DNA of 63,543 nucleotides, counting the filler, from Octopus bimaculoides (taxonomy: Eukaryota): the NCBI RefSeq assembly GCF_001194135.2. It is 6 parts of 6 records of this genome, joined end to end, with 100 filler letters (N's around TTAATTAATTAA, not from the genome) between each part and the next. Parts side by side here need not be neighbours in the genome. Positions count along the whole stretch, not along the records: positions 7,248 to 15,355 come from NC_068985.1; 5 more parts are not named here. The stretch is one strand, 5' to 3'. The translations under genes and the position numbers were made by a program. Positions 6,129-15,455 of the stretch are shown here, in pieces. Position 1 is the first letter of the stretch; every line of letters begins with the position of its first letter. Below the pieces are notes generated by a model, which was not told the origin of the DNA, searched no databases, and saw nothing but the letters and a program-made list of their open reading frames with translations.

Positions 6129-7272
6129 TATTATAAATGTAATTATGCTATTTAATCTTCTTGGCATAATTGAAACAGTTGCAAGATTTTTGCAGATAAT
6201 AAATTATATTAATGGCATATCTCCATTTCCTTAATATTTTTTTTAATATGCATAAACCAAGATTTATTTTTAAACCTATTATTTTATGAATGTTATTCAC
6301 AAAAAAAAAATATTAGATAATGAACAAGTAATTAATTGGATATTACTATCCTTTAATGAGGCTATTTTAACCTCTAATTGAATATATACCCAGCAATTTC
6401 TTAAAAAGTTGTCTGCATATATACGCTGAGATCTAAAAGGTTTTTTATGTAGATGTCTGTATAGTAACAATGCTTACGTATTCGTATGTGTGCGTCTATG
6501 CTTACGTATAGAGCCTAGGTTTACACTTGTGCATATACAGTTATAATTTCGTGTGTGTGCGTTTTTGTGTATACATGGGTAAGAGTATATGCTTATATTT
6601 ATTTACACATACATGCATCTATTCGCGTGTGTGCATCTATGTTATATATGGGAATGTGCGCTCAAGTCCACGCTCACACATACTTGAATGTGTGCATACG
6701 CATGTATACGGTTATGTTTGTGAGTATTTACGTACATATCCCCATATATATCTATATACGTGATGCTAATATACATTTTTGTATACACATATATACGCAG
6801 TCTAATTTTTGTGTTGGTTTACTATATACGTTAAACTACCGTCTCTTTCTCTACTTCTTTCTTCCCACTCCCACCTTTCTCTTTTTTCTTCCTTTCTGTC
6901 TTTCTTTCTTTCTTTCTCTCTTTCTTTCTTCCTTTCCTTCCTCACGATAGCCACACTTTCTCCCTTTCTATATTAGTAACGTTATTATCGATATGTTACC
7001 CTTTCCCCCTCTACTTCATAGGTTAAGATACAATTTTTGTTACCAGCGCATAAGTTTTTTCGTGCGCGAGCTTAAATGCATGTGTATGTGTATGGGGTTA
7101 AATAACAAACATTATATGAATGCACATTGGTGTAACAAGCTGCACTTNNNNNNNNNNNNNNNNNNNNNNNNNNNNNNNNNNNNNNNNNNNNTTAATTAAT
7201 TAANNNNNNNNNNNNNNNNNNNNNNNNNNNNNNNNNNNNNNNNNNNNATATATATATATATATATATATATA

Positions 7273-7625
7273 AAGTAATGTCCAGCGACTGTGTGTCGCT
7301 TGAATTTCTATATGTTGCGAGCAGAGGCTAGCTACTGTCATCTCTGGGGGACAAGATGTCCAGTACTGAAGAGAGGCAGAAATAGCCCGAAACCAAACTG
7401 GTATGCTGGTCCCGTCGTTAGAGTGTGGTAGGGGTTCGTTTCCCTGCTCACAGTATATCGGATGCAGCTGTGCATCGTTAACCAGTTAGAGGAGATGTCC
7501 TTTTTGGGTTAAAAAATCGTAGTAAATTCGCTCCAACGGAACAGCCATGCTGAAGTGGCTACGAGCATTACATGCCAGTACAACTGCGATCATCTCATAG
7601 AGAGATTTTAGAACTAGCATTTTAG
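7273..7625 (+). mobile_element. Structured non-coding unit carrying the hammerhead (retrozyme-like candidate), ending in a SINE-related segment
   Basis: GC-richer island between (TA)n tracts. Hairpins gcgac/gtcgc (7285-7299) and gatgca/tgcatc (~7461-7476). 7533-7570 matches caacggaacagc...aagtggct in the SINE at 21.6 kb. Confidence 0.45.
7348..7413 (+). ncRNA. Type I hammerhead ribozyme, structurally complete; predicted cleavage 3' of A7403 (GUA)
   Basis: Core CUGAAGA 7366-7372 and GAAA 7389-7392. Stem II: G7373-C7388 plus GGC/GCC, with a 7-nt loop. Stem III: A-CCA/UGG-U, loop AAC, triplet GUA. Stem I: CAGUA/UGCUG, an 8-nt 5' bulge, then GGGAC/GUCCC. Confidence 0.85.
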
Positions 7626-7629
7626 CTTA

Positions 7630-7773
7630 TATATATATACATACATATATACGTCGGGCTTCTTTCAGTTTCTTTTCAGTTTCTGGCCCGAGGCTACAGT
7701 AGAAGGCACTTAACCAATGGGCCACGGAGTGGGACTGAACCTGAAACCATCTAGTTGGGTGCAAGTTTCTTAC

Positions 7774-7775
<2 letters not shown>
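7630..7775 (-). mobile_element. SINE family 1, 5' half with internal deletion
   Basis: Reverse complement matches the head and body of 5679-5840 (gtaagaaacttgc...ggttcagtcccact...ctactgtagcctcgggcc...gaaactgaaagaagccc). Confidence 0.75.
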
Positions 7776-7823
<48 letters not shown>

Positions 7824-8049
7824 ACAGGAAGGGCAACAAAAGAAAGAAAAAGACCTCGATATTATGCAAAGAAATTTATCTGTAAAAATATGTGACACTT
7901 ATTCCAGTGAATTTTTTTTTTCACCGGAATTTTCAATTGGCCGGATAACTGAAGAGATGTTGGCGTGGGCTCCCTCCCTGGCATCCGAAACTCGGAGTTT
8001 TATCATAGCTACTGAATAAGTGTCACATATTTTTACAGATATATATATA

Positions 8050-8180
8050 TATGCAACGGGTTTCTTTCGATTCGCATCTCTCAAATCCACTCAGAAGGAT
8101 TTGATCGGCCCGGGAGTATGGTAGAAGACACTCGCTCACGCAATAGGACTGAACCCAGCAAGCAAACTTTCAACTCACAG
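8050..8180 (-). mobile_element. SINE family 1, degenerate 5' half
   Basis: aaatccactcagaagg...ggcccggg...tagaagacact...ggactgaaccc matches the family-1 body in reverse. Confidence 0.7.
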
Positions 8181-8236
<56 letters not shown>

Positions 8237-8965
8237 TACATACATACATACATACACACACACATACACCGTTTATTTTTCTTCATTTTACTTCTTGGAA
8301 GAATATTATACGTATGAATAACGATGTGGTTAAGAAGTTCAGTTATAATGTGGGTCTGAGTTCGATACCCAAAATTTCAGGCCTTGTGCCATTTGTAGAA
8401 AAGATTATTATTAATATTATTGTGCTATTGTTGTTGTAATTGGGTTTGTTTATCATAATTGAGCAATATAACATATGTTTATGAATTATAGTCTATGATA
8501 AATTATTACTTAAATGTGTTCTGCAAATTGTATTTGTGTGAGTAGTCGCTATATTTTCTCTCATAAATGTCATCTCTGAAGAGCGCAGGGTTAAATAATC
8601 GAGTTGTTATCAAACACCGCATTGAACTCCTAATGCGAAATTACAATTCTGTAAATAATAATGATAATAACAATAATATTTTATAAGCTTAACACTTATA
8701 AGCGAACACCATGCACTGACTAAGGTGCCCCAGTTTGTTTAAAACAGAACGAATTACTGACCAGATGGCAAATCGTTTAAAAAACAATAAGAGAAATAAT
8801 GAATGTACCCAGTGTATAATGAAAAGATAATGAGAAAATATACAGTTACCAGTGGTTTTAATGATAGCTCAAGAAATACGATACAGTTAAGCAAAGCGTT
8901 TTATCACAGTATGGAATAGAATTACTGAAAAGGCGATTTACGCTTTAAAAAAATTAATAATAACA

Positions 8966-9015
<50 letters not shown>

Positions 9016-9377
9016 AATGATAATAATAATAATACAATCAAACCTACTGTAAAGAAACTAGATCAAATATGTAACTGTAAAAAATGGAAATACATACAAA
9101 TGATGGTGATAAGGAATTTGTGTAAAATGGAAGGAATGCGGGTAATTAAAATAGGAAAAAAGTCGTAACGGAGAATGTAAAAATCTGACTTGGCTTTCCT
9201 GAATTACGGAAACGAACAAATGAATACTTTTTAAAAAATGTAAATCATGCACACCCTGCATATATATATATGTACATAGGCAGGTAGGGTTAGACATGTT
9301 CAGATGAATCAGACGAACATAACCCACCCGGCAGCTCTCTTTTAAATATAATTATCACATTTTTGGGGGGTACATTT

Positions 9378-9712
9378 TACTCATTTCAATCATTGGATTG
9401 CGGCCGTGCTGGCGTACGACCTTCAACAGTTTAGTCGAACAAATCGATCCCAGTACTTATAGAGGTTTTTTTCTCTTTCGTTTTTAAGTCTGGTACTTAT
9501 TCTTATGTGTGAAAGTTTGTCCCCCAACCCACAGCTTGACAAACGCTGTTGGTTTGTCTACGTCCTTGTAACTTAGCGTTCGGCAAAAGAGGCCAAGAAA
9601 ATACGTACCAGACTTTAAAACAAATATGTACACGGGTCGATTTGTTCGACTAGATCCCTTCAGGGCAGTGCTCCAGCATGACCGCAGTCCAATGACTGAA
9701 ACAAGCAAAAGA
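9378..9712. mobile_element. Two SINE family-1 3' halves in inverted orientation (9378-9505 minus, 9505-9712 plus)
   Basis: Left arm tttcaatcattggattgcggccgtgctgg...tagtcgaacaaatcga is reverse-complementary to tcgatttgttcgacta...ccagcatgaccgcagtccaatgactgaaa on the right. Confidence 0.8.
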
Positions 9713-10609
9713 TTTTTTTTTTGTACTATCAGAATATCCAGTATTCAAAACACAGAGATTCAGATAGTTTTGAAAATAAATAAATTGATTAATCAATTAA
9801 TTAATTAATTAATTAATTAATTAACGGAAAAAAACGCATTGGAGGGGCGATGCATACCCTGCGCACAGATAATTATTTTTTGCAAATTATAGTGTGGCTT
9901 ACAATGCTTTTTAATTGAGCTGAATTAAGCTTTGTAAGTGTTTGACTAAAAGATTTGAAGCCTAAGTAGTTGACAGTTAAAAGTAGACTTGATCGATGTC
10001 TGCGCCAAACGCATATGAGTAAAATTTGCATATGACTAAATAAATGATTATTCAAATAATAATCATGATTAGGAAAAAGAAAGTGAACAAAATGAAATAC
10101 TTATAGAAAATATTGCATAGTATTTGAGAAGTGTTTTCAACGTCTCTCAATGATGGCAGGTGAATCAAACGTACTGTAGTTCGTTGTAGGATATAAATAA
10201 TATGACCTCTTGCTAATGGGAAAATTTATAAGTTCGATTTTTTTTATTATCTTTTTTTTTCTAAATATCACCATTATATGTATTTATACTCAGGTGAAAT
10301 TAAGAAATCAAGTTACAAATAAAATAAACCCACTGTACACACACACAGTCGCATATCTGTCAGTATGTATGTATGTATGTATGTATGTATGTATATCTGT
10401 ATGTATGTATGTATGTATGTATATCTGTATGTATGTATGTATGTATGTATGCAAAGGCACACCATGATCTATATACACACGCAGACGAGGGTCAAATCAA
10501 ATTATATATATATATTTATATTGTGCACTGTTCCTTGATGGTAAGATCAGCAAAAAAAAGCTCCATCTGGTGAGAGATAAATAGTATCTAATAGACATAA
10601 TATATGTTT

Positions 10610-10904
10610 TATGTGCTAGTAATAGATTCTTGTGGTGAGAAAATGCCAAAACGATGCATAACCTGCGTGCACATAAATTCTTTTTCGCAAAATATTTCCA
10701 GCCAAAACATTTTGATTCACCCGTCCACCAGTTTTGAAGATAATCAAACTAGATTCTCATCATTTCGAGCTACTCACCCATTGAGTATTGCTGCTAAATT
10801 TAGAGAAAACCCGTTCGGCCGTTTTCCAGTTATTTTGCAAACACACAGGCAAACAGACGAATGACTACAATACCCTGCTTTCGCTTACACGCGCAGGGTA
10901 ATAA
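10610..10904 (-). mobile_element. DINE-1/Helentron-associated (HINE)-like non-autonomous element
   Basis: Minus strand begins ttattaccctgc...gcagggta (hairpin at 10871-10900), then a GTCY-like tract (cgtctgtttgcctgtgtgtttg) and ccgaacgggttttctctaaattt, the layout typical of DINE-1/HINEs. The 3' boundary is approximate. Confidence 0.55.
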
Positions 10905-11051
10905 ACACATTACCTACTTTGAAGTATTTGCTCCGGTGATTAAAGAAAGCCATATCAAATTTTGCATTCCCCATTACAACACTTACTGCATATTTACTGT
11001 GGTTAAGATTAGTAAAATTTATGGTAAATTTAACGAAAGTTTATTATTATT

Positions 11052-11330
11052 AGACGCAGACGTGGCAGTCTGTGAAGAAACTTGCTTCCCAACAAATGGG
11101 CTCCGGGATCAGTTCCACTACATGTGTGTGTGCCTTTAAGTTTGTCCTCCACCACCGTTTAACAACCGGCGTTGATGTGTTTACGTCCCCGTAACTTATC
11201 GGTTCGACAAAAAGTGAGCGTCAGAATAAGCACAAGGCTTCAAAAATAAAAATAAGTCATGGAGTCGATTCATTCGACTACAAATTTCTTCAAGCATGAC
11301 CGCAGTATAATGACTGAAATAGGTAAAAGA
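11052..11330 (+). mobile_element. SINE family 1 with internal deletion
   Basis: Head (gtggcagtctgtgaagaaacttgcttcccaac) is joined directly to the 3' half (gtgtttacgtccccgtaact...gactgaaataggtaaaaga). Confidence 0.8.
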
Positions 11331-11924
11331 TTAAAAAAAAAAAAAAAAACTCATTGGAAATCTAGACAGTTAAAATGTAGCATGCGGTATATATGTACTT
11401 TTATAACGTTTTCTGTTTTTTATCTATTGAAATATCTTTATGGCTAGCACTAGATTATCGTGTGCTATATCGGATAGCTCAATCTATTAGTTAGAAGTGA
11501 ACTTTTATCTCAAAAAAATTAAAATAATGATTGAAGACGATATATATCATGGGCGTAACCGGGATTTCGACAAGGAAGAATTCTCTATGATTAAAATGGA
11601 TCCACCTTTAGCCGTTTAAAAAACTAAATGTTTGATAATGATTATATTTCCATGGAGTAACGGTGGGGTAGATCCCTAAGCTATTAATGTTCTCTCTCAC
11701 TTCGTATATGCCTATATCCTGAGTCTGCTGAAGTCAAAACAAGACAACAGCTGTGCCGATGATCCCCTACCGGACAGGAGGAATACATGTCCCCAACTTA
11801 CCTCTTGTCTCCAGACAGACTATCTTTTATTTAATGATATGTTAATTCCGGATAATTATTCATCCTTAAGATGATCTCCCTTTTTCAATCGGATTCAGTT
11901 ACTGCTGCTGCTAGCCGTTTGATT

Positions 11925-12365
11925 TACCATTTCTAGAAGCGAAAATAATCCAATAACTCATTTCTACAGCTGAGTGAACTGGAACAACGGGAAATAAAGT
12001 GCTTTGCTCAAGAACACAACATTCAGCCTGATCCGGAAATCGAATTCACTACCTTGTAAGGGCAGGATTCGTGACAGACGAACTGTAGACAGAAACTTCG
12101 CTGCGGGCTAGCTAGGAAGTTGGTCAGTAGGAAAACAAAAGGGACTTCCGGTAGAAGAAGAAAAACTAAAGAATGTCAACATTGAATGTGAAATGAATGT
12201 GAGTGAACTAAACAGAAATAACTGACGACTTAAGCCCTGATGTACGTAAAGTAATAAACCTTTGATAAATGTATTCTCGTCTCCACTAGTTTGTTTGTGT
12301 ATAGCTTAACAAAGCTATAACCACATGATTGTGAGCCCGACGCTCGAACCACTGAGCCATGCGAT
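11925..12365 (-). mobile_element. tRNA-derived SINE interrupted by a 270-bp insertion
   Basis: Left part ends ...ggaaatcgaattcactacct (12054) and the tRNA-like head resumes as tgattgtgagcccgacgctcgaaccactgagccatgcg (12325-12362). Confidence 0.7.
12055..12324 (+). mobile_element. Putative solo LTR (TG...CA) nested in the SINE
   Basis: Begins tgtaag and ends ...accaca; has an internal AATAAA (gtaataaacc, ~12251) and is non-coding. No clear TSD. Confidence 0.45.
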
Positions 12366-12418
12366 TGTCACTTCGCAGACGAGTATGATCACTACTGACA
12401 AATTATTTTATCCTAGAT

Positions 12419-12625
12419 CAGTAGCTCTCAACCATCTTTTACCTATAGACCACCTTGATTACTATTTTAATCTGGTGGACCTCCATAGCCTCTCGATGTT
12501 TAAAAACTGGTTTTATAGATGCGTCTTTCAAAATTCCCATTTTGTTTTTCAAACATTAACTTGTGTAGGTTGAACTATGTAAAACGTTAAAGAAAGAAAC
12601 CTAGCTGTTTCTTCCAATAAATACA
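12419..12625 (+). mobile_element. Truncated hAT (Charlie-like) MITE, same family as 33718-34049
   Basis: Starts cagtagctctcaacc. The internal sequence (gattactatt...ctggtgga...gatgtttaaaaact...aaagaaacctagctgtttctt) aligns by eye with 33750-33900. Confidence 0.75.
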
Positions 12626-12629
12626 TTCT

Positions 12630-13082
12630 TTTATTCTTTTACTTGTTTCAGTTATTTGACCACGGCCATGCTGGAGCACCGCCCTGAAGGATATTAGTCG
12701 AACATATCAACCCAAGAATTTATTTTTTAAGCCTATTTTTTATTCTATCGTTCTCTTTTGCCGAACCGGTAAGTTACTCCCAGCTATTGAATGGCAACAG
12801 GTTATACTGGATCAGATCATACAGAAGCACCGAATGTGGCCTGACACATATACAAACATACATACCTCTTTTTTTCACTTATTTCAGTCATTATATTGCG
12901 ACCATACTGGGGTACCACCTTAAAGAACTTTTAGTCAAATGACTCGATCTCAGTGCATTTTTTTTAAAAACCTGGTACTTATTCTATCGCTTCTTTTGCC
13001 GAACCGCTAAGTTACGGAGACGTAAACACACCAACACACCAAGCGGTGGAAGTGGGGGACAAACACACACACACACACACTA
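12630..13082 (-). mobile_element. Two tandem SINE family-1 3' halves (12630-12778 and 12868-13082)
   Basis: Both contain tttcagtca/tta...gcacc/gtacc...tagtc...ttattctatcg...ttttgccgaacc in reverse orientation to 5990-6120. Confidence 0.75.
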
Positions 13083-13340
13083 ACTTCACAACTTTCGCCA
13101 CTCGAAACTGTCTTGGTCGCTGCACAAGATAAATTTTGTTAGTGATTAGGTCGCAGATTCGAACGACGAAAATTGTGAAGTTAACGGTATTTGTACATTT
13201 CTGAATGACTATCGTTTTAGCTTCAGCACACGATCTCAGATTAAAATATTTCCCAGGCAGATACATCACCCTAATAATATAATGTTAATATTTCCTCTTG
13301 TAAACATCTGCACTGAGACAAATGCAGAGGTGAAGAAGAT

Positions 13341-13349
13341 AAAAAAAAA
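13341..13349 (-). terminator. Pol III terminator (T9) of tRNA-Gly
   Basis: Nine-A run on plus (T9 on minus), 12 nt downstream of the tRNA 3' end. Confidence 0.8.
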
Positions 13350-13361
13350 TGAAGCTTTCAA

Positions 13362-13432
13362 TGCATCGGCCGGGAATCGAACCCGGGCCGCCCGCGTGGC
13401 AGGCGAGCATTCTTCCACTGAACCACCGATGC
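13362..13432 (-). tRNA. trnG-GCC: tRNA-Gly, anticodon GCC
   Basis: Reverse complement is GCATCGGTGGTTCAGTGGAAGAATGCTCGCCTGCCACGCGGGCGGCCCGGGTTCGATTCCCGGCCGATGCA: 71 nt, complete cloverleaf, intact A and B boxes. It matches the canonical invertebrate tRNA-Gly(GCC) as recalled, apart from T->A in the D-loop. Confidence 0.95.
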
Positions 13433-13989
13433 AGATGCCTAATATTCTTACAGTTATCTATATAATTGTATAGTCAGTCATTAGGCTATTGTTGATTTGT
13501 ATTGGTAAAGATCAGACTAGTCTTTATCATAGGACTACTCTCATCTCGCAGTCAAATAATACGATGTAGTCGGTCAATCGATTAGGTGCAAGCACTGTTC
13601 TATTGTTCCAGTTATATATATACCAAGCTCTTCCTCGCTGAGAAGCATATTGCAGATATGAATCGAATCTGATACAGTATAACAGACTGACTATGTGGCC
13701 TTCTTTCTCTTTATTGTTCATTTTACTTTTTTATAATTTTAATTCTGGCGGTGACCGCACATGGAATGGAACCAACCAAAGTTGTTCTGTGAATTCTTTT
13801 TCTACGTTTAACTTGGTGAAGACAGAGTTTTTGCGTTTTTTTGTTTTTTTTTTAGATAATGTTGAGGTAGTTTTCTAGTTTGGTGTATATGCGTCTATTG
13901 TTTAATGAGAATTTTTCATATAGTGATAGGGTCTCTGATGCTTGAAATTTCCCGTGGCAAAAAAAAAAACTACCTGTCGCACGTGCAGG

Positions 13990-14900
13990 TGGTCTCACAC
14001 TTAGTATATTTGTTTCATTGTACGGGTGGTCCACAGGTGTGAAGATCCTATGGTGATGTATAGGGCCATGTTGTCCATTATAATTTTTTGATTGTTTTGG
14101 TTTGTTGTGGCACTGTTAGAACCTCAGGTACGGCTGGTATGAATGGTGATGGTTCTAATACATTGTTTAAACATCAATGTTTATTCATGTTGGTAAAAAG
14201 TAGTAACTATGATTGTTCTAAGTATGTTTGTGCATTGTTTTACTTTCCTTATTTGCCTTCAATGTGTCCTGCAAACGTGGAAAGCTAGAACAGCTAGTAT
14301 TGTTATCTTCTGTGTGCAGTGTGTTAATCTGTTGCATGTGATTGTTGCTTGTATTTGGTAAAGAAGCGAATTAGTTAAGTGCTGCTCTAAATTCGATGTT
14401 TTGAATACACGTTTCTCGCTGACTGATATAGGGTCAGAATTACTGGGCAGTTTTGGGTAGCGAATAACGGAAGGATATGAGTACGATATCATCCTCGTAT
14501 GAGGCTGTGTATGTGTGTGGTTTGAGGAGGTACAGATATAGGTAGAAAAGAGTGGGTGAGACGACGGATTTATGTAGAACTTCACTGGGGAAATTGTACG
14601 ATTTGGAAACGTTATGTTTGTACACTGCTTAGACTTGGCGCCCTGACAAGTGGTTTGTTAGCCAAAAGTTTGTGTTGCTTCTTAAAGTGATATTTGTTGA
14701 GTATTTTGTGTGACTAGATAGCGGCATGGTCGAAAATTTTGCTGATGTCGATGATAGTTACAGTGGTACTTGTGAGAGATATTTTGTTTGCCTGTTTTTG
14801 CTAGGTTGTTCTTTTGTTTTTTGAAGCAGTTGAGTATCTCTTGTGTTAGGTTGATATATATTTTTCCTATGTTTTGAACAAAATACCTTACTGTCTGATA
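13990..14900 (-). mobile_element. Degenerate non-LTR retrotransposon reverse-transcriptase fragment (clade uncertain)
   Basis: Minus-strand pieces IIDISKIFD (DISKAFD motif), SVVSPTLFYLY (GSVLSPTLFNLY) and SYEDDIVL (YADD), in the correct order, with frameshifts. Confidence 0.7.
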
Positions 14901-15455
14901 AAATAAATAAAATGAGTTGATGGAAGTAATTCGAATAGACCAATGGCAAGATATTGAATACATAACCCACAAACTAAGAAAATAATACATAAACTAAGAA
15001 ATAATGTTCTGAATCCAATGCACATAAATTCTAACCTGCAGATTGTAAATAGTTATAGCATAATTATATAAATAACTACAAGCAATTTTCAATTGGAGGT
15101 TCCATGGAAGAATGTTCACCTTCCAAGCAGGATACCAAGATTCGATTTGCGGTTGTTGTGCTTTTCATTTATTTTTTCTATAAACGATTGCAAATAATCA
15201 TGCCTCTCCCAAGTTTTGGCTTCTGTAGAACTTCTTTGATATTGTTTTTCATAAAGACGTCCTTTTATATAACATTACAGTTCAACGTCAACGAAATCGT
15301 TCCCGCCAATCTGCAACAGTCATTGATACCACTCTCTCTCTCTCTCTCTCTCTCTNNNNNNNNNNNNNNNNNNNNNNNNNNNNNNNNNNNNNNNNNNNNT
15401 TAATTAATTAANNNNNNNNNNNNNNNNNNNNNNNNNNNNNNNNNNNNNNNNNNNN

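What the first reader, a model, noticed from the sequence alone, without database searches (positions are those of the whole stretch)
7273..7625. Complete type I hammerhead ribozyme in a structured non-coding unit: candidate retrozyme-like system
Seen: every conserved core base is present (CUGAAGA, G10.1-C11.1, GAAA, A15.1-U16.1, GUA triplet) and all three stems pair. Stem I has an 8-nt bulge closed by a further 5-bp helix, opposite a 7-nt loop II, and extra hairpins lie on both sides. Established: this loop-bulge layout supports fast cleavage in natural type I hammerheads (e.g. Schistosoma Sm-alpha), and metazoan retrozymes are ~150-400-nt non-coding hammerhead repeats that yield circular RNAs. 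Inference: this is a member of a self-cleaving, possibly circRNA-forming mobile family. Its helper is unknown; a SINE-related tail segment at 7533-7570 suggests a chimeric or LINE-dependent history. A second ribozyme copy could be hidden in the gap at 7148-7247. Whether it has already been described cannot be checked here.
Basis: partly seen in the sequence, partly recalled or inferred. Interest (0 to 1): 0.88.

Follow-up and report, generated by a model that had tools for sequence, protein, structure and literature searches.

The report
Solo type I hammerhead ribozyme copy
The sequence holds a well-formed self-cleaving hammerhead ribozyme motif of the kind carried by small non-coding retroelements in invertebrate animals, but it is a single copy with no sign here of the tandem arrangement that makes circular RNA, so it is a fairly ordinary new example of a known class.

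Summary
At 7346-7417 (+) there is a complete type I hammerhead: core CUGAAGA, GAAA, A15.1-U16.1 and a GUA cleavage triplet (cut after A7403). Helix I has 6 bp, an 8-nt bulge and a distal helix. Helix III has 4 bp. Helix II has 4 bp with one unpaired base (A7374), so the stems do not all pair cleanly.

A motif this good is expected about 1e-6 times in the piece by chance. Rfam does not call it (best 18.6 bits against a cut-off of 52). Rfam also misses every copy of a bona fide animal hammerhead family that I recovered from metagenomes, and that family shares this helix II layout.

A second, different hammerhead-like motif lies 583 nt downstream on the same strand (7944-8004).

The retrozyme reading is only partly supported. 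The unit is non-coding, 353 nt and 46% GC, like mussel retrozymes. But only one copy is present, no homologue could be retrieved, and the predicted equilibrium fold is not the active one. The "SINE tail" is not significant.

Most likely this is a solo, probably immobile copy of a hammerhead-bearing retroelement related to Penelope-like elements. It is a new member of a known kind, of modest interest.

The parts
7273..7625 (+). Non-coding unit A (353 nt, 46% GC) that carries the ribozyme. It lies between (AT)12 at the piece edge and the (TA)n tail of a SINE copy.
   Evidence: No ORF over 50 aa, and the translations have no homologues. Fold z-score is -2.4. GC content. Microsatellites.
7346..7417 (+). 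Hammerhead ribozyme motif HHR-1, type I (helix I open), including the distal part of helix I.
   Evidence: Chance expectation is 1.2e-6 in the piece. Rfam best is HH9 at 18.6 bits, below the cut-off.
7352..7359 (+). Loop 1: the 8-nt 5' bulge CAAGAUGU. It is closed distally by G7348-A7351 with U7410-C7413.
   Evidence: Direct reading and the constrained fold.
7360..7365 (+). Helix I, 5' strand CCAGUA. It pairs with UGCUGG at 7404-7409.
7366..7372 (+). Catalytic core C3-A9, CUGAAGA.
7373..7388 (+). Helix II: G7373-C7388, A7374 unpaired, GGC with GCC, loop AGAAAUA.
   Evidence: The same layout occurs in 42 distinct metagenome hammerheads. [quoted passage not shown]
7389..7403 (+). G12 A13 A14, helix III (ACCA with UGGU, loop AAC) and A17. 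The predicted cleavage is between 7403 and 7404.
7404..7413 (+). 3' strand of helix I (UGCUGG) followed by the distal helix strand (UCCC).
7628..7775 (-). (TA)n/(ATAC)n tail plus a tRNA-type SINE copy. It bounds unit A on the right.
7944..8004 (+). Second hammerhead-like motif, HHR-2. Helix I is GAUAA with UUAUC. Core CUGAAGA is at 7949-7955. Helix II is GAUGUUGG with CUGGCAUC (8 bp), with one extra C (7985/7986). Helix III is ACU with AGU. U17 is 7999.
   Evidence: Chance expectation is 1.5e-5 in the piece. There is no Rfam hit.
7877..8041 (.). Palindromic, MITE-like element with 27-28-bp perfect inverted termini. It encloses HHR-2.
   Evidence: MFE -61.6 kcal/mol, z = -7.3; direct reading.

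Best explanation
HHR-1 is a genuine type I hammerhead ribozyme of the canonical metazoan architecture. A roughly 350-nt non-coding retroposed unit carries it, and the unit belongs to the hammerhead-bearing non-autonomous elements of animals (non-LTR retrozymes, that is, derivatives of Penelope-like-element terminal repeats).

Shown:
- The full core is present, with three helices in type I topology.
- The loop-1 bulge faces loop 2.
- The motif is non-random.
- The unit is non-coding.

Inferred:
- When the + strand is transcribed, the ribozyme folds transiently during transcription and cuts between A7403 and U7404. This leaves a 2',3'-cyclic phosphate and a 5'-OH.
- In a tandem array, two such cuts would release a unit-length RNA. 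An RtcB-type tRNA ligase would circularise it, and a Penelope-like reverse transcriptase would copy it back into DNA.
- At this locus only one unit is visible. It is most likely a solo monomer that can cut a read-through transcript once but cannot make a circle or transpose.
- The unpaired base in helix II and a more stable competing fold suggest weak or regulated activity.
For: - Core and helices are present at the stated coordinates.
- Chance expectation is 1.2e-6 in the piece and 0.15 per Gb.
- A second, independent hammerhead-like motif lies 583 nt away on the same strand. Its own chance expectation is 1.5e-5.
- The helix II layout CUGAAGAG-N-GGC...GCC-CGAAAC recurs in 42 distinct animal-DNA sequences recovered from metagenomes. 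Their helix I covaries through GC, UA, AU and CG at one pair. They lie in host DNA carrying a mariner fragment and an Ig exon.
- Rfam gathering thresholds miss all 20 of those loci that I tested. The lack of an Rfam call on HHR-1 is therefore uninformative.
[quoted passage not shown] Canonical metazoan type I motifs have a 6-bp helix I and a 4-bp helix II (PMC4209133).
- Validated coral and mussel retrozyme hammerheads have the same plan. The coral helix II is GCC-AGAAA-GGC.
- Mussel retrozyme repeats are 350-390 bp with GC below 50% (PMC7229834). Unit A is 353 nt and 46% GC.
- Solo monomers are common in retrozyme families (bioRxiv 10.64898/2026.07.22.740005).
- 235 Rfam Hammerhead_1 loci are reported in the giant squid genome (PMC6962438).
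Against: - There is no second copy or tandem repeat of the unit in 8.1 kb.
- No homologue was found by any accessible route, so there is no covariation and no copy number.
- The best Rfam score is 18.6 bits against a cut-off of 52.
- In the nearest-neighbour model the active fold (-18.5 kcal/mol) loses to a fold in which CCAGU 7360-7364 pairs with ACUGG 7397-7401 (-24.9 kcal/mol). Helices I and III have pairing probability near 0.
- In the PLE register, position 10.1 would be A opposite C, which breaks the conserved G10.1-C11.1 pair.
- There is no reverse transcriptase or GIY-YIG ORF in the piece.
- The (TA)n on the right belongs to a SINE tail, so it is not clean evidence of PLE-style targeting of microsatellites.
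Confidence: 0.6

Rival explanations
1. Fragment or solo terminal repeat (pLTR) of an autonomous Penelope-like element, rather than a retrozyme monomer. The ribozyme would be the one that PLEs carry in their flanking repeats.
For: - PLE repeats carry type I hammerheads with an unpaired base at the 5' end of helix II.
- PLEs insert preferentially into microsatellites such as (TA)n (PMC8557442), and unit A abuts (AT)n.
- Retrozymes and pLTRs are phylogenetically intermingled.
Against: - HHR-1 has the canonical plan (helix I 6 bp, helix II 4 bp, a 4-bp non-palindromic helix III). It does not have the minimal PLE plan of a long helix II, a short helix I and a tiny palindromic helix III.
- There is no RT or endonuclease remnant in 8 kb.
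- The right-hand (TA)n is a SINE tail.
Confidence: 0.2
2. SINE-like, polymerase-III-transcribed retroposon that carries a hammerhead and is mobilised by a LINE. This is the Schistosoma Sm-alpha model and the reader's "LINE-dependent" idea.
For: - Its size (353 nt) is close to Sm-alpha (own knowledge).
- A B-box-like GGTTCGTTTCC lies at 7433-7443, in a hairpin just 3' of the ribozyme.
- The region is packed with SINE insertions.
Against: - There is no convincing A box at the proper spacing, and no tRNA-like fold.
- There is no A-rich or microsatellite 3' tail of its own.
- The claimed SINE-related segment is a 15-nt match with E=8.
Confidence: 0.1
3. Dead relic. The motif descends from a real hammerhead element, but this copy no longer cleaves.
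For: - Helix II has an irregularity at its base. N=A is a minority state (2 of 42) in the related metagenome family, where G dominates.
- The active fold is 6.4 kcal/mol above the MFE.
- It is a solitary copy.
Against: - All 15 core positions are intact, and all helices are closed by standard pairs.
- G7373 can pair with C7388 and leave A7374 bulged.
- Natural retrozyme hammerheads tolerate a weak helix II base, for example the U-U mismatch in axolotl HHR_Amex2.
Confidence: 0.35
4. Chance resemblance: not derived from any ribozyme.
For: - The Rfam score is at noise level.
- The fold z-score of the 96-nt region is -0.4.
- The first stage may have screened a great deal of sequence.
Against: - Expected frequency is 0.15 per Gb for this quality, against hundreds of annotated hammerheads per cephalopod genome.
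- A second motif lies 583 nt away.
- There were no hits in 55 Mb of random sequence, even with loose settings.
Confidence: 0.04

Closest known systems
Metazoan non-LTR retrozymes (coral Acropora, mussel Mytilus, axolotl; Cervera & de la Pena 2020, PMC7229834)
   Same: - Type I hammerhead with a 6-bp helix I, a 4-bp helix II and a short A-rich loop 2.
- A non-coding unit of about 350 nt with GC below 50%.
- Mollusc-type host.
- A predicted stable alternative fold that hides the ribozyme.
   Different: - Only one unit is seen, whereas the family is defined by tandem repeats.
- There is an extra unpaired A in helix II.
- N7 is A, not U.
- Helix III is longer (4 bp, triloop) and non-palindromic.
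- Expression and circularity are unknown.
Penelope-like element hammerheads (min-HHRs in pLTRs; Cervera & de la Pena 2014, PMC4209133)
   Same: - Type I topology.
- CUGAAGAG...CGAAAC core flanks.
- One unpaired nucleotide on the 5' side at the base of helix II.
- The closest sequence matches to helix II in accessible databases are an animal hammerhead family with this min-HHR plan, though I found no PLE genes beside it.
   Different: - PLE min-HHRs have a 7-8-bp helix II, a 4-5-bp helix I, an ill-defined loop 1 and a 1-2-bp palindromic helix III that works as a dimer.
- HHR-1 has the canonical plan and a monomer-competent helix III.
- No RT or GIY-YIG gene lies nearby.
Schistosoma Sm-alpha hammerhead (Rfam Hammerhead_1, RF00163)
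   Same: From my own knowledge of the crystallised Sm-alpha sequence:
- A 5' bulge in helix I closed by a distal helix.
- A loop 2 containing AAAUA.
- A helix I ending in ...CCAG.
- A carrier repeat of about 335 nt.
   Different: - The sequence is otherwise unrelated.
- Rfam clan scoring gives at most 18.6 bits.
- The cleavage triplet is GUA, not GUC.
- Helix II is irregular.

Membership tests
Hammerhead ribozyme, type I | Conserved core: C3 U4 G5 A6 N7 G8 A9, G12 A13 A14, A15.1-U16.1, H17 not G | tested here: met
   CUGAAGA at 7366-7372, GAA at 7389-7391, A7392-U7402, A7403.
Hammerhead ribozyme, type I | Three helices around the core, with helices II and III capped and helix I open | tested here: met
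   Helix I 6 bp, helix II 1+3 bp with one bulged A, helix III 4 bp.
Hammerhead ribozyme, type I | G10.1-C11.1 pair | tested here: inconclusive
   G7373-C7388 forms if A7374 bulges. In the PLE register (extra nucleotide after A9), 10.1 would be A7374 opposite C.
Hammerhead ribozyme, type I | Score at or above the Rfam gathering threshold for a hammerhead model | tested here: not met
   Best is HH9 at 18.6 bits against 52. As a control, 20 loci of a covarying natural hammerhead family also score below threshold.
Hammerhead ribozyme, type I | Active fold is thermodynamically accessible | tested here: inconclusive
   The constrained hammerhead fold is -18.5 kcal/mol against an MFE of -24.9 kcal/mol. 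Pairing probability of helices I and III is near 0. The model ignores tertiary contacts and co-transcriptional folding.
Hammerhead ribozyme, type I | Mg2+-dependent self-cleavage at H17 | not testable with these tools
   Needs an in vitro transcription and cleavage assay.
Hammerhead ribozyme, type I | Compensatory changes in the helices among homologues | not testable with these tools
   No homologue of unit A was retrievable, because no eukaryotic genome collection is on hand.
Metazoan non-LTR retrozyme | Head-to-tail tandem repeats (at least 2 units of 150-450 bp), each with a type I hammerhead | tested here: not met
   There is a single copy in 7248-15355. Upstream is cut by the piece edge right after (AT)n, so a neighbouring unit cannot be excluded.
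Metazoan non-LTR retrozyme | Non-coding unit with GC below 50% | tested here: met
   46% GC. Only ORFs of 50 aa or less, without homologues.
Metazoan non-LTR retrozyme | Multi-copy family in the genome; expressed as circular RNA | not testable with these tools
   Needs the source genome and RNA-seq or northern data.
Penelope-like element (pLTR with min-HHR) | [quoted passage not shown] | tested here: met
   The 5' strand GAGGC faces the 3' strand GCCC. The feature is described in PMC4209133.
Penelope-like element (pLTR with min-HHR) | Very short, palindromic helix III (dimeric ribozyme), long helix II, short helix I | tested here: not met
   Helix III is ACCA-AAC-UGGU, which is 4 bp and not palindromic. 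Helix II has 4 bp and helix I has 6 bp.
Penelope-like element (pLTR with min-HHR) | Adjacent RT and GIY-YIG endonuclease ORF | tested here: not met
   The longest ORF is 108 aa. Ten of the twelve ORFs of 70 aa or more in the piece have no Pfam hit.

The most novel reading that the evidence does not exclude
The two different hammerhead motifs (cleavage at 7403|7404 and at 7999|8000, same strand) could act as a pair on one transcript. They would release a 596-nt RNA with ligatable ends: a heterologous "two-ribozyme cassette" that could circularise whatever lies between them, here a SINE and microsatellites. Alternatively, HHR-2 could show that hammerheads also ride in palindromic MITE-like (DNA-transposon-type) elements. 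That association has not been described, to my knowledge.
Probability: 0.06. Interest if true: 0.6.

Novelty: new member of a known kind. Interest (0 to 1): 0.3.

Why it matters
If this copy is active, it adds a cephalopod-type example to the hammerhead-bearing retroelements that generate abundant small circular RNAs in invertebrates.

It also shows that curated Rfam thresholds miss such copies. Both this one and a whole insect-DNA family score below cut-off. Hammerhead counts in genome papers, such as 235 in the giant squid, are therefore probably underestimates.

The one-base irregularity at the base of helix II recurs across distant animals. It is a small but testable structure-function point.

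None of this changes current understanding of the class.

Tried and rejected
- **Rfam, gathering and relaxed modes.** There was no call above threshold. I rejected this as evidence of absence after the control.
- **Homologues through spurious ORF translations across the element.** I tried exact look-ups, a word-indexed protein search and an exhaustive HMMER search. The only hit was an unrelated repetitive 1250-aa protein.
- **Locating the source contig or identifying the organism.** I tried longer window ORFs and a SINE-derived ORF. Nothing was on record.
- **Searching papers for SINE sequence strings.** Nothing was found. The cephalopod origin therefore remains my recollection of octopus SINE sequences, not a tested result.
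- **Genome contigs pattern scan.** It returned no matches, and the collection is prokaryotic anyway.
- **Homology between unit A, unit B and the region around the third CTGAAGAG (8576).** Alignment scores are no better than shuffles, so the three are not copies of one family.
- **The third CTGAAGAG as a ribozyme.** Its helices I and III do not form, so I rejected it.
- **(TA)n flanks as evidence of PLE targeting.** I weakened this argument because the right-hand runs are tails of minus-strand SINE copies.
- **PLE genes next to the metagenome hammerheads.** None were found. There was only a mariner fragment and an Ig exon.

Full report
**What is in the sequence**

The piece 7248-15355 is AT-rich (36% GC), non-coding animal-type DNA.
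- It holds microsatellites.
- It holds several copies of short interspersed repeats in both orientations.
- It holds one eukaryote-type tRNA-Gly(GCC) gene.
- No ORF exceeds 108 aa, and ten of the twelve ORFs of 70 aa or more have no Pfam match.
- The SINE copies resemble octopus SINEs as I remember them. I could not test this.

**The motif**

Direct reading and a descriptor scan I wrote confirm a type I hammerhead on the + strand.
- The distal helix is G7348-A7351 with U7410-C7413.
- Loop 1 is the 8-nt bulge CAAGAUGU (7352-7359).
- Helix I is CCAGUA (7360-7365) with UGCUGG (7404-7409).
- The core CUGAAGA is at 7366-7372.
- Helix II is G7373-C7388, then unpaired A7374, then GGC with GCC. Its loop is AGAAAUA.
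- GAA is at 7389-7391.
- Helix III is ACCA with UGGU and loop AAC (7392-7402).
- A17 is 7403, so the predicted cut is 7403|7404.

Two details are not. Helix II carries a one-base irregularity, and the distal helix has 4 contiguous pairs rather than 5.

**Is it chance?**

Rfam finds no hammerhead at gathering thresholds. In relaxed mode on 453 nt the best is HH9 at 18.6 bits against a cut-off of 52, E=0.06. Taken alone that is noise level.

A structural descriptor says otherwise. There were no hits in 55 Mb of first-order Markov sequence with the piece's composition, even at the loosest setting. A semi-analytic estimate gives these figures for motifs at least as good:
- 7.6e-11 per position.
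- 1.2e-6 expected in the piece.
- About 0.15 per Gb of genome.

Cephalopod genomes carry hundreds of hammerheads that Rfam does detect, for example 235 Hammerhead_1 loci in the giant squid (PMC6962438). A real origin is therefore far more likely than chance.

**Independent support from a second motif**

Listing every CUGANGA in the piece revealed a second complete hammerhead-like motif on the same strand, 583 nt downstream.
- The core is at 7949-7955.
- Helix I is GAUAA with UUAUC.
- Helix II has 8 bp, with one extra C before G12.
- Helix III is ACU with AGU.
- U17 is 7999.

It sits inside a 165-nt palindromic element with 27-28-bp perfect inverted termini (z = -7.3).

A third CTGAAGAG at 8576 does not form helices I and III, and I dismissed it. 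The three regions share no detectable homology.

**The helix II irregularity is a natural feature**

I scanned metagenome contigs with CTGAAGAGNGGC-N5-9-GCCCGAAAC. The scan returned 81 loci, mostly from one group of related samples that I take, from memory of the accession prefixes, to be termite-gut metagenomes.
- Forty-two distinct sequences form one hammerhead family with a palindromic ACAUGU helix III.
- Their 4-5-bp helix I has a fourth pair that covaries: GCUC/GAGC, UCUC/GAGA, ACUC/GAGU, CCUC/GAGG.
- They lie in animal host DNA carrying a mariner fragment and an Ig exon.
- Rfam's gathering thresholds miss all 20 loci I tested.

The literature describes exactly this trait. [quoted passage not shown]

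In the metagenome family the variable base is G in 35 of 42 sequences. This gives an extra G followed by GGGC with GCCC. In HHR-1 the base is A, so two readings are possible:
- G7373 pairs with C7388 and A7374 bulges.
- In the PLE register, 10.1 is an A opposite C, which would be a damaging change.

The sequence alone cannot decide between them.

**Architecture compared with known classes**

HHR-1 has the "canonical metazoan" plan: helix I 6 bp, helix II 4 bp, loop 1 facing loop 2 (PMC4209133). Experimentally validated coral and mussel retrozyme ribozymes in the supplement of PMC7229834 have the same plan. The coral one reads CUGAUGAG-GCC-AGAAA-GGC-CGAAAC.

HHR-1 differs in three ways:
- N7 is A.
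- Helix II has the extra A.
- Helix III is longer and non-palindromic, which should allow it to act as a monomer.

Unit A is 353 nt and 46% GC. Mussel retrozyme repeats are 350-390 bp with GC below 50%.

**What argues for caution**

- Only one unit is present. Retrozymes are defined by tandem units. No repeat of unit A exists in the piece, and the left side is cut at the piece edge just after (AT)12.
- No homologue could be fetched, because no eukaryotic genome collection is on hand. The trick of searching with spurious ORF translations failed.
- The nearest-neighbour model puts the hammerhead fold at -18.5 kcal/mol. A competing rod, in which CCAGU 7360-7364 pairs with ACUGG 7397-7401, is at -24.9 kcal/mol. 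Helices I and III are essentially unpopulated at equilibrium.
  - Such masking is usual for viroid and retrozyme RNAs, which cleave during transcription and are then protected.
  - It is equally what a decayed copy might show.
- The (TA)n to the right of both units is the 3' tail of minus-strand SINE copies. The attractive link to PLE insertion into (TA)n (PMC8557442) is therefore not clean.

**Most likely mechanism**

When the + strand is transcribed, the ribozyme folds transiently and cleaves after A7403. This gives 2',3'-cyclic-phosphate and 5'-OH ends.

In a tandem array this yields unit-length RNA. RtcB-type ligase circularises it (shown for axolotl and mussel retrozymes). A Penelope-like reverse transcriptase is then thought to copy it back into the genome.

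Here the unit is most probably a solo monomer, a dead-end product of that cycle. At most it can cut a host read-through transcript once.

- Shown: the motif, its non-randomness and its non-coding context.
- Inferred: catalysis, family membership, the helper, and the solo status.

**Verdict**

This is a real hammerhead-derived motif (about 95%). It most likely belongs to the retrozyme/PLE lineage (about 60%, plus about 20% for a PLE terminal-repeat fragment). I put the chance that this particular copy is catalytically dead at about one in three.

It is a new member of a known kind, of modest interest. The small novel angle is the second motif inside a palindromic MITE-like element, and the possibility that the two ribozymes bracket a 596-nt excisable RNA.

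Noticed in passing
window 7877-8041 (ribozyme motif 7944-8004, +): A second complete hammerhead-like motif (core 7949-7955, cut 7999|8000) lies inside a palindromic MITE-like element with 27-28-bp perfect inverted termini. Its helix II has 8 bp with one extra C before G12. I do not know of a described link between hammerheads and DNA-transposon-like palindromes.
   Followed up: partly
window 8576-8660 (+): A third CTGAAGAG lies on the same strand, with GAAA 61 nt later. Helix II could form with an internal loop, but helices I and III do not form. The 8-mer is expected about 0.1 times per strand in the piece but occurs three times, all on the + strand.
   Followed up: partly
loci L001-L081 (e.g. 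L007, L020, L024, L041): About 68 metagenome contigs, apparently insect host DNA in termite-gut samples, carry one family of type I hammerheads. The family has a palindromic ACAUGU helix III and a covarying helix I. Rfam gathering thresholds miss all 20 loci tested. L041 has two copies in inverted orientation.
   Followed up: partly
window 13361-13433 (-): A eukaryote-type tRNA-Gly(GCC) gene scores 63.8 bits in Rfam. A run of nine T follows 11 nt downstream, which fits a polymerase III terminator, so it is probably functional.
   Followed up: partly
window 7653-7775 (-) and 8052-8185 (-): Two diverged copies of a tRNA-type SINE share the blocks GGTTCAGTCC, GTGTCTTCTAC, CGGGCC and GAAAGAAGCCCG. 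Each has a (TA)n tail at its 3' end and a (CA)n run at its 5' end. From memory they resemble octopus SINEs.
   Followed up: partly
window 9390-9712, 11060-11335, 12635-12800, 12870-13040: Four copies, in both orientations and 70-90% alike, of another repeat of about 300 nt (…CATGCTGGAGCACCGCC…TTAGTCGAACAAATCGA…). They make up a large share of the piece.
   Followed up: no
window 7424-7452: A stable 11-bp hairpin lies immediately 3' of the ribozyme and contains a B-box-like GGTTCGTTTCC (7433-7443). No matching A box or tRNA-like fold was found.
   Followed up: partly
window 7396-7410: There is a near-duplicate, ACUGGUA|UGCUGGU, across the cleavage site. It gives the 5' strand of helix I (CCAGU) two alternative partners. 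This could act as a built-in switch between an inactive rod and the active ribozyme.
   Followed up: partly
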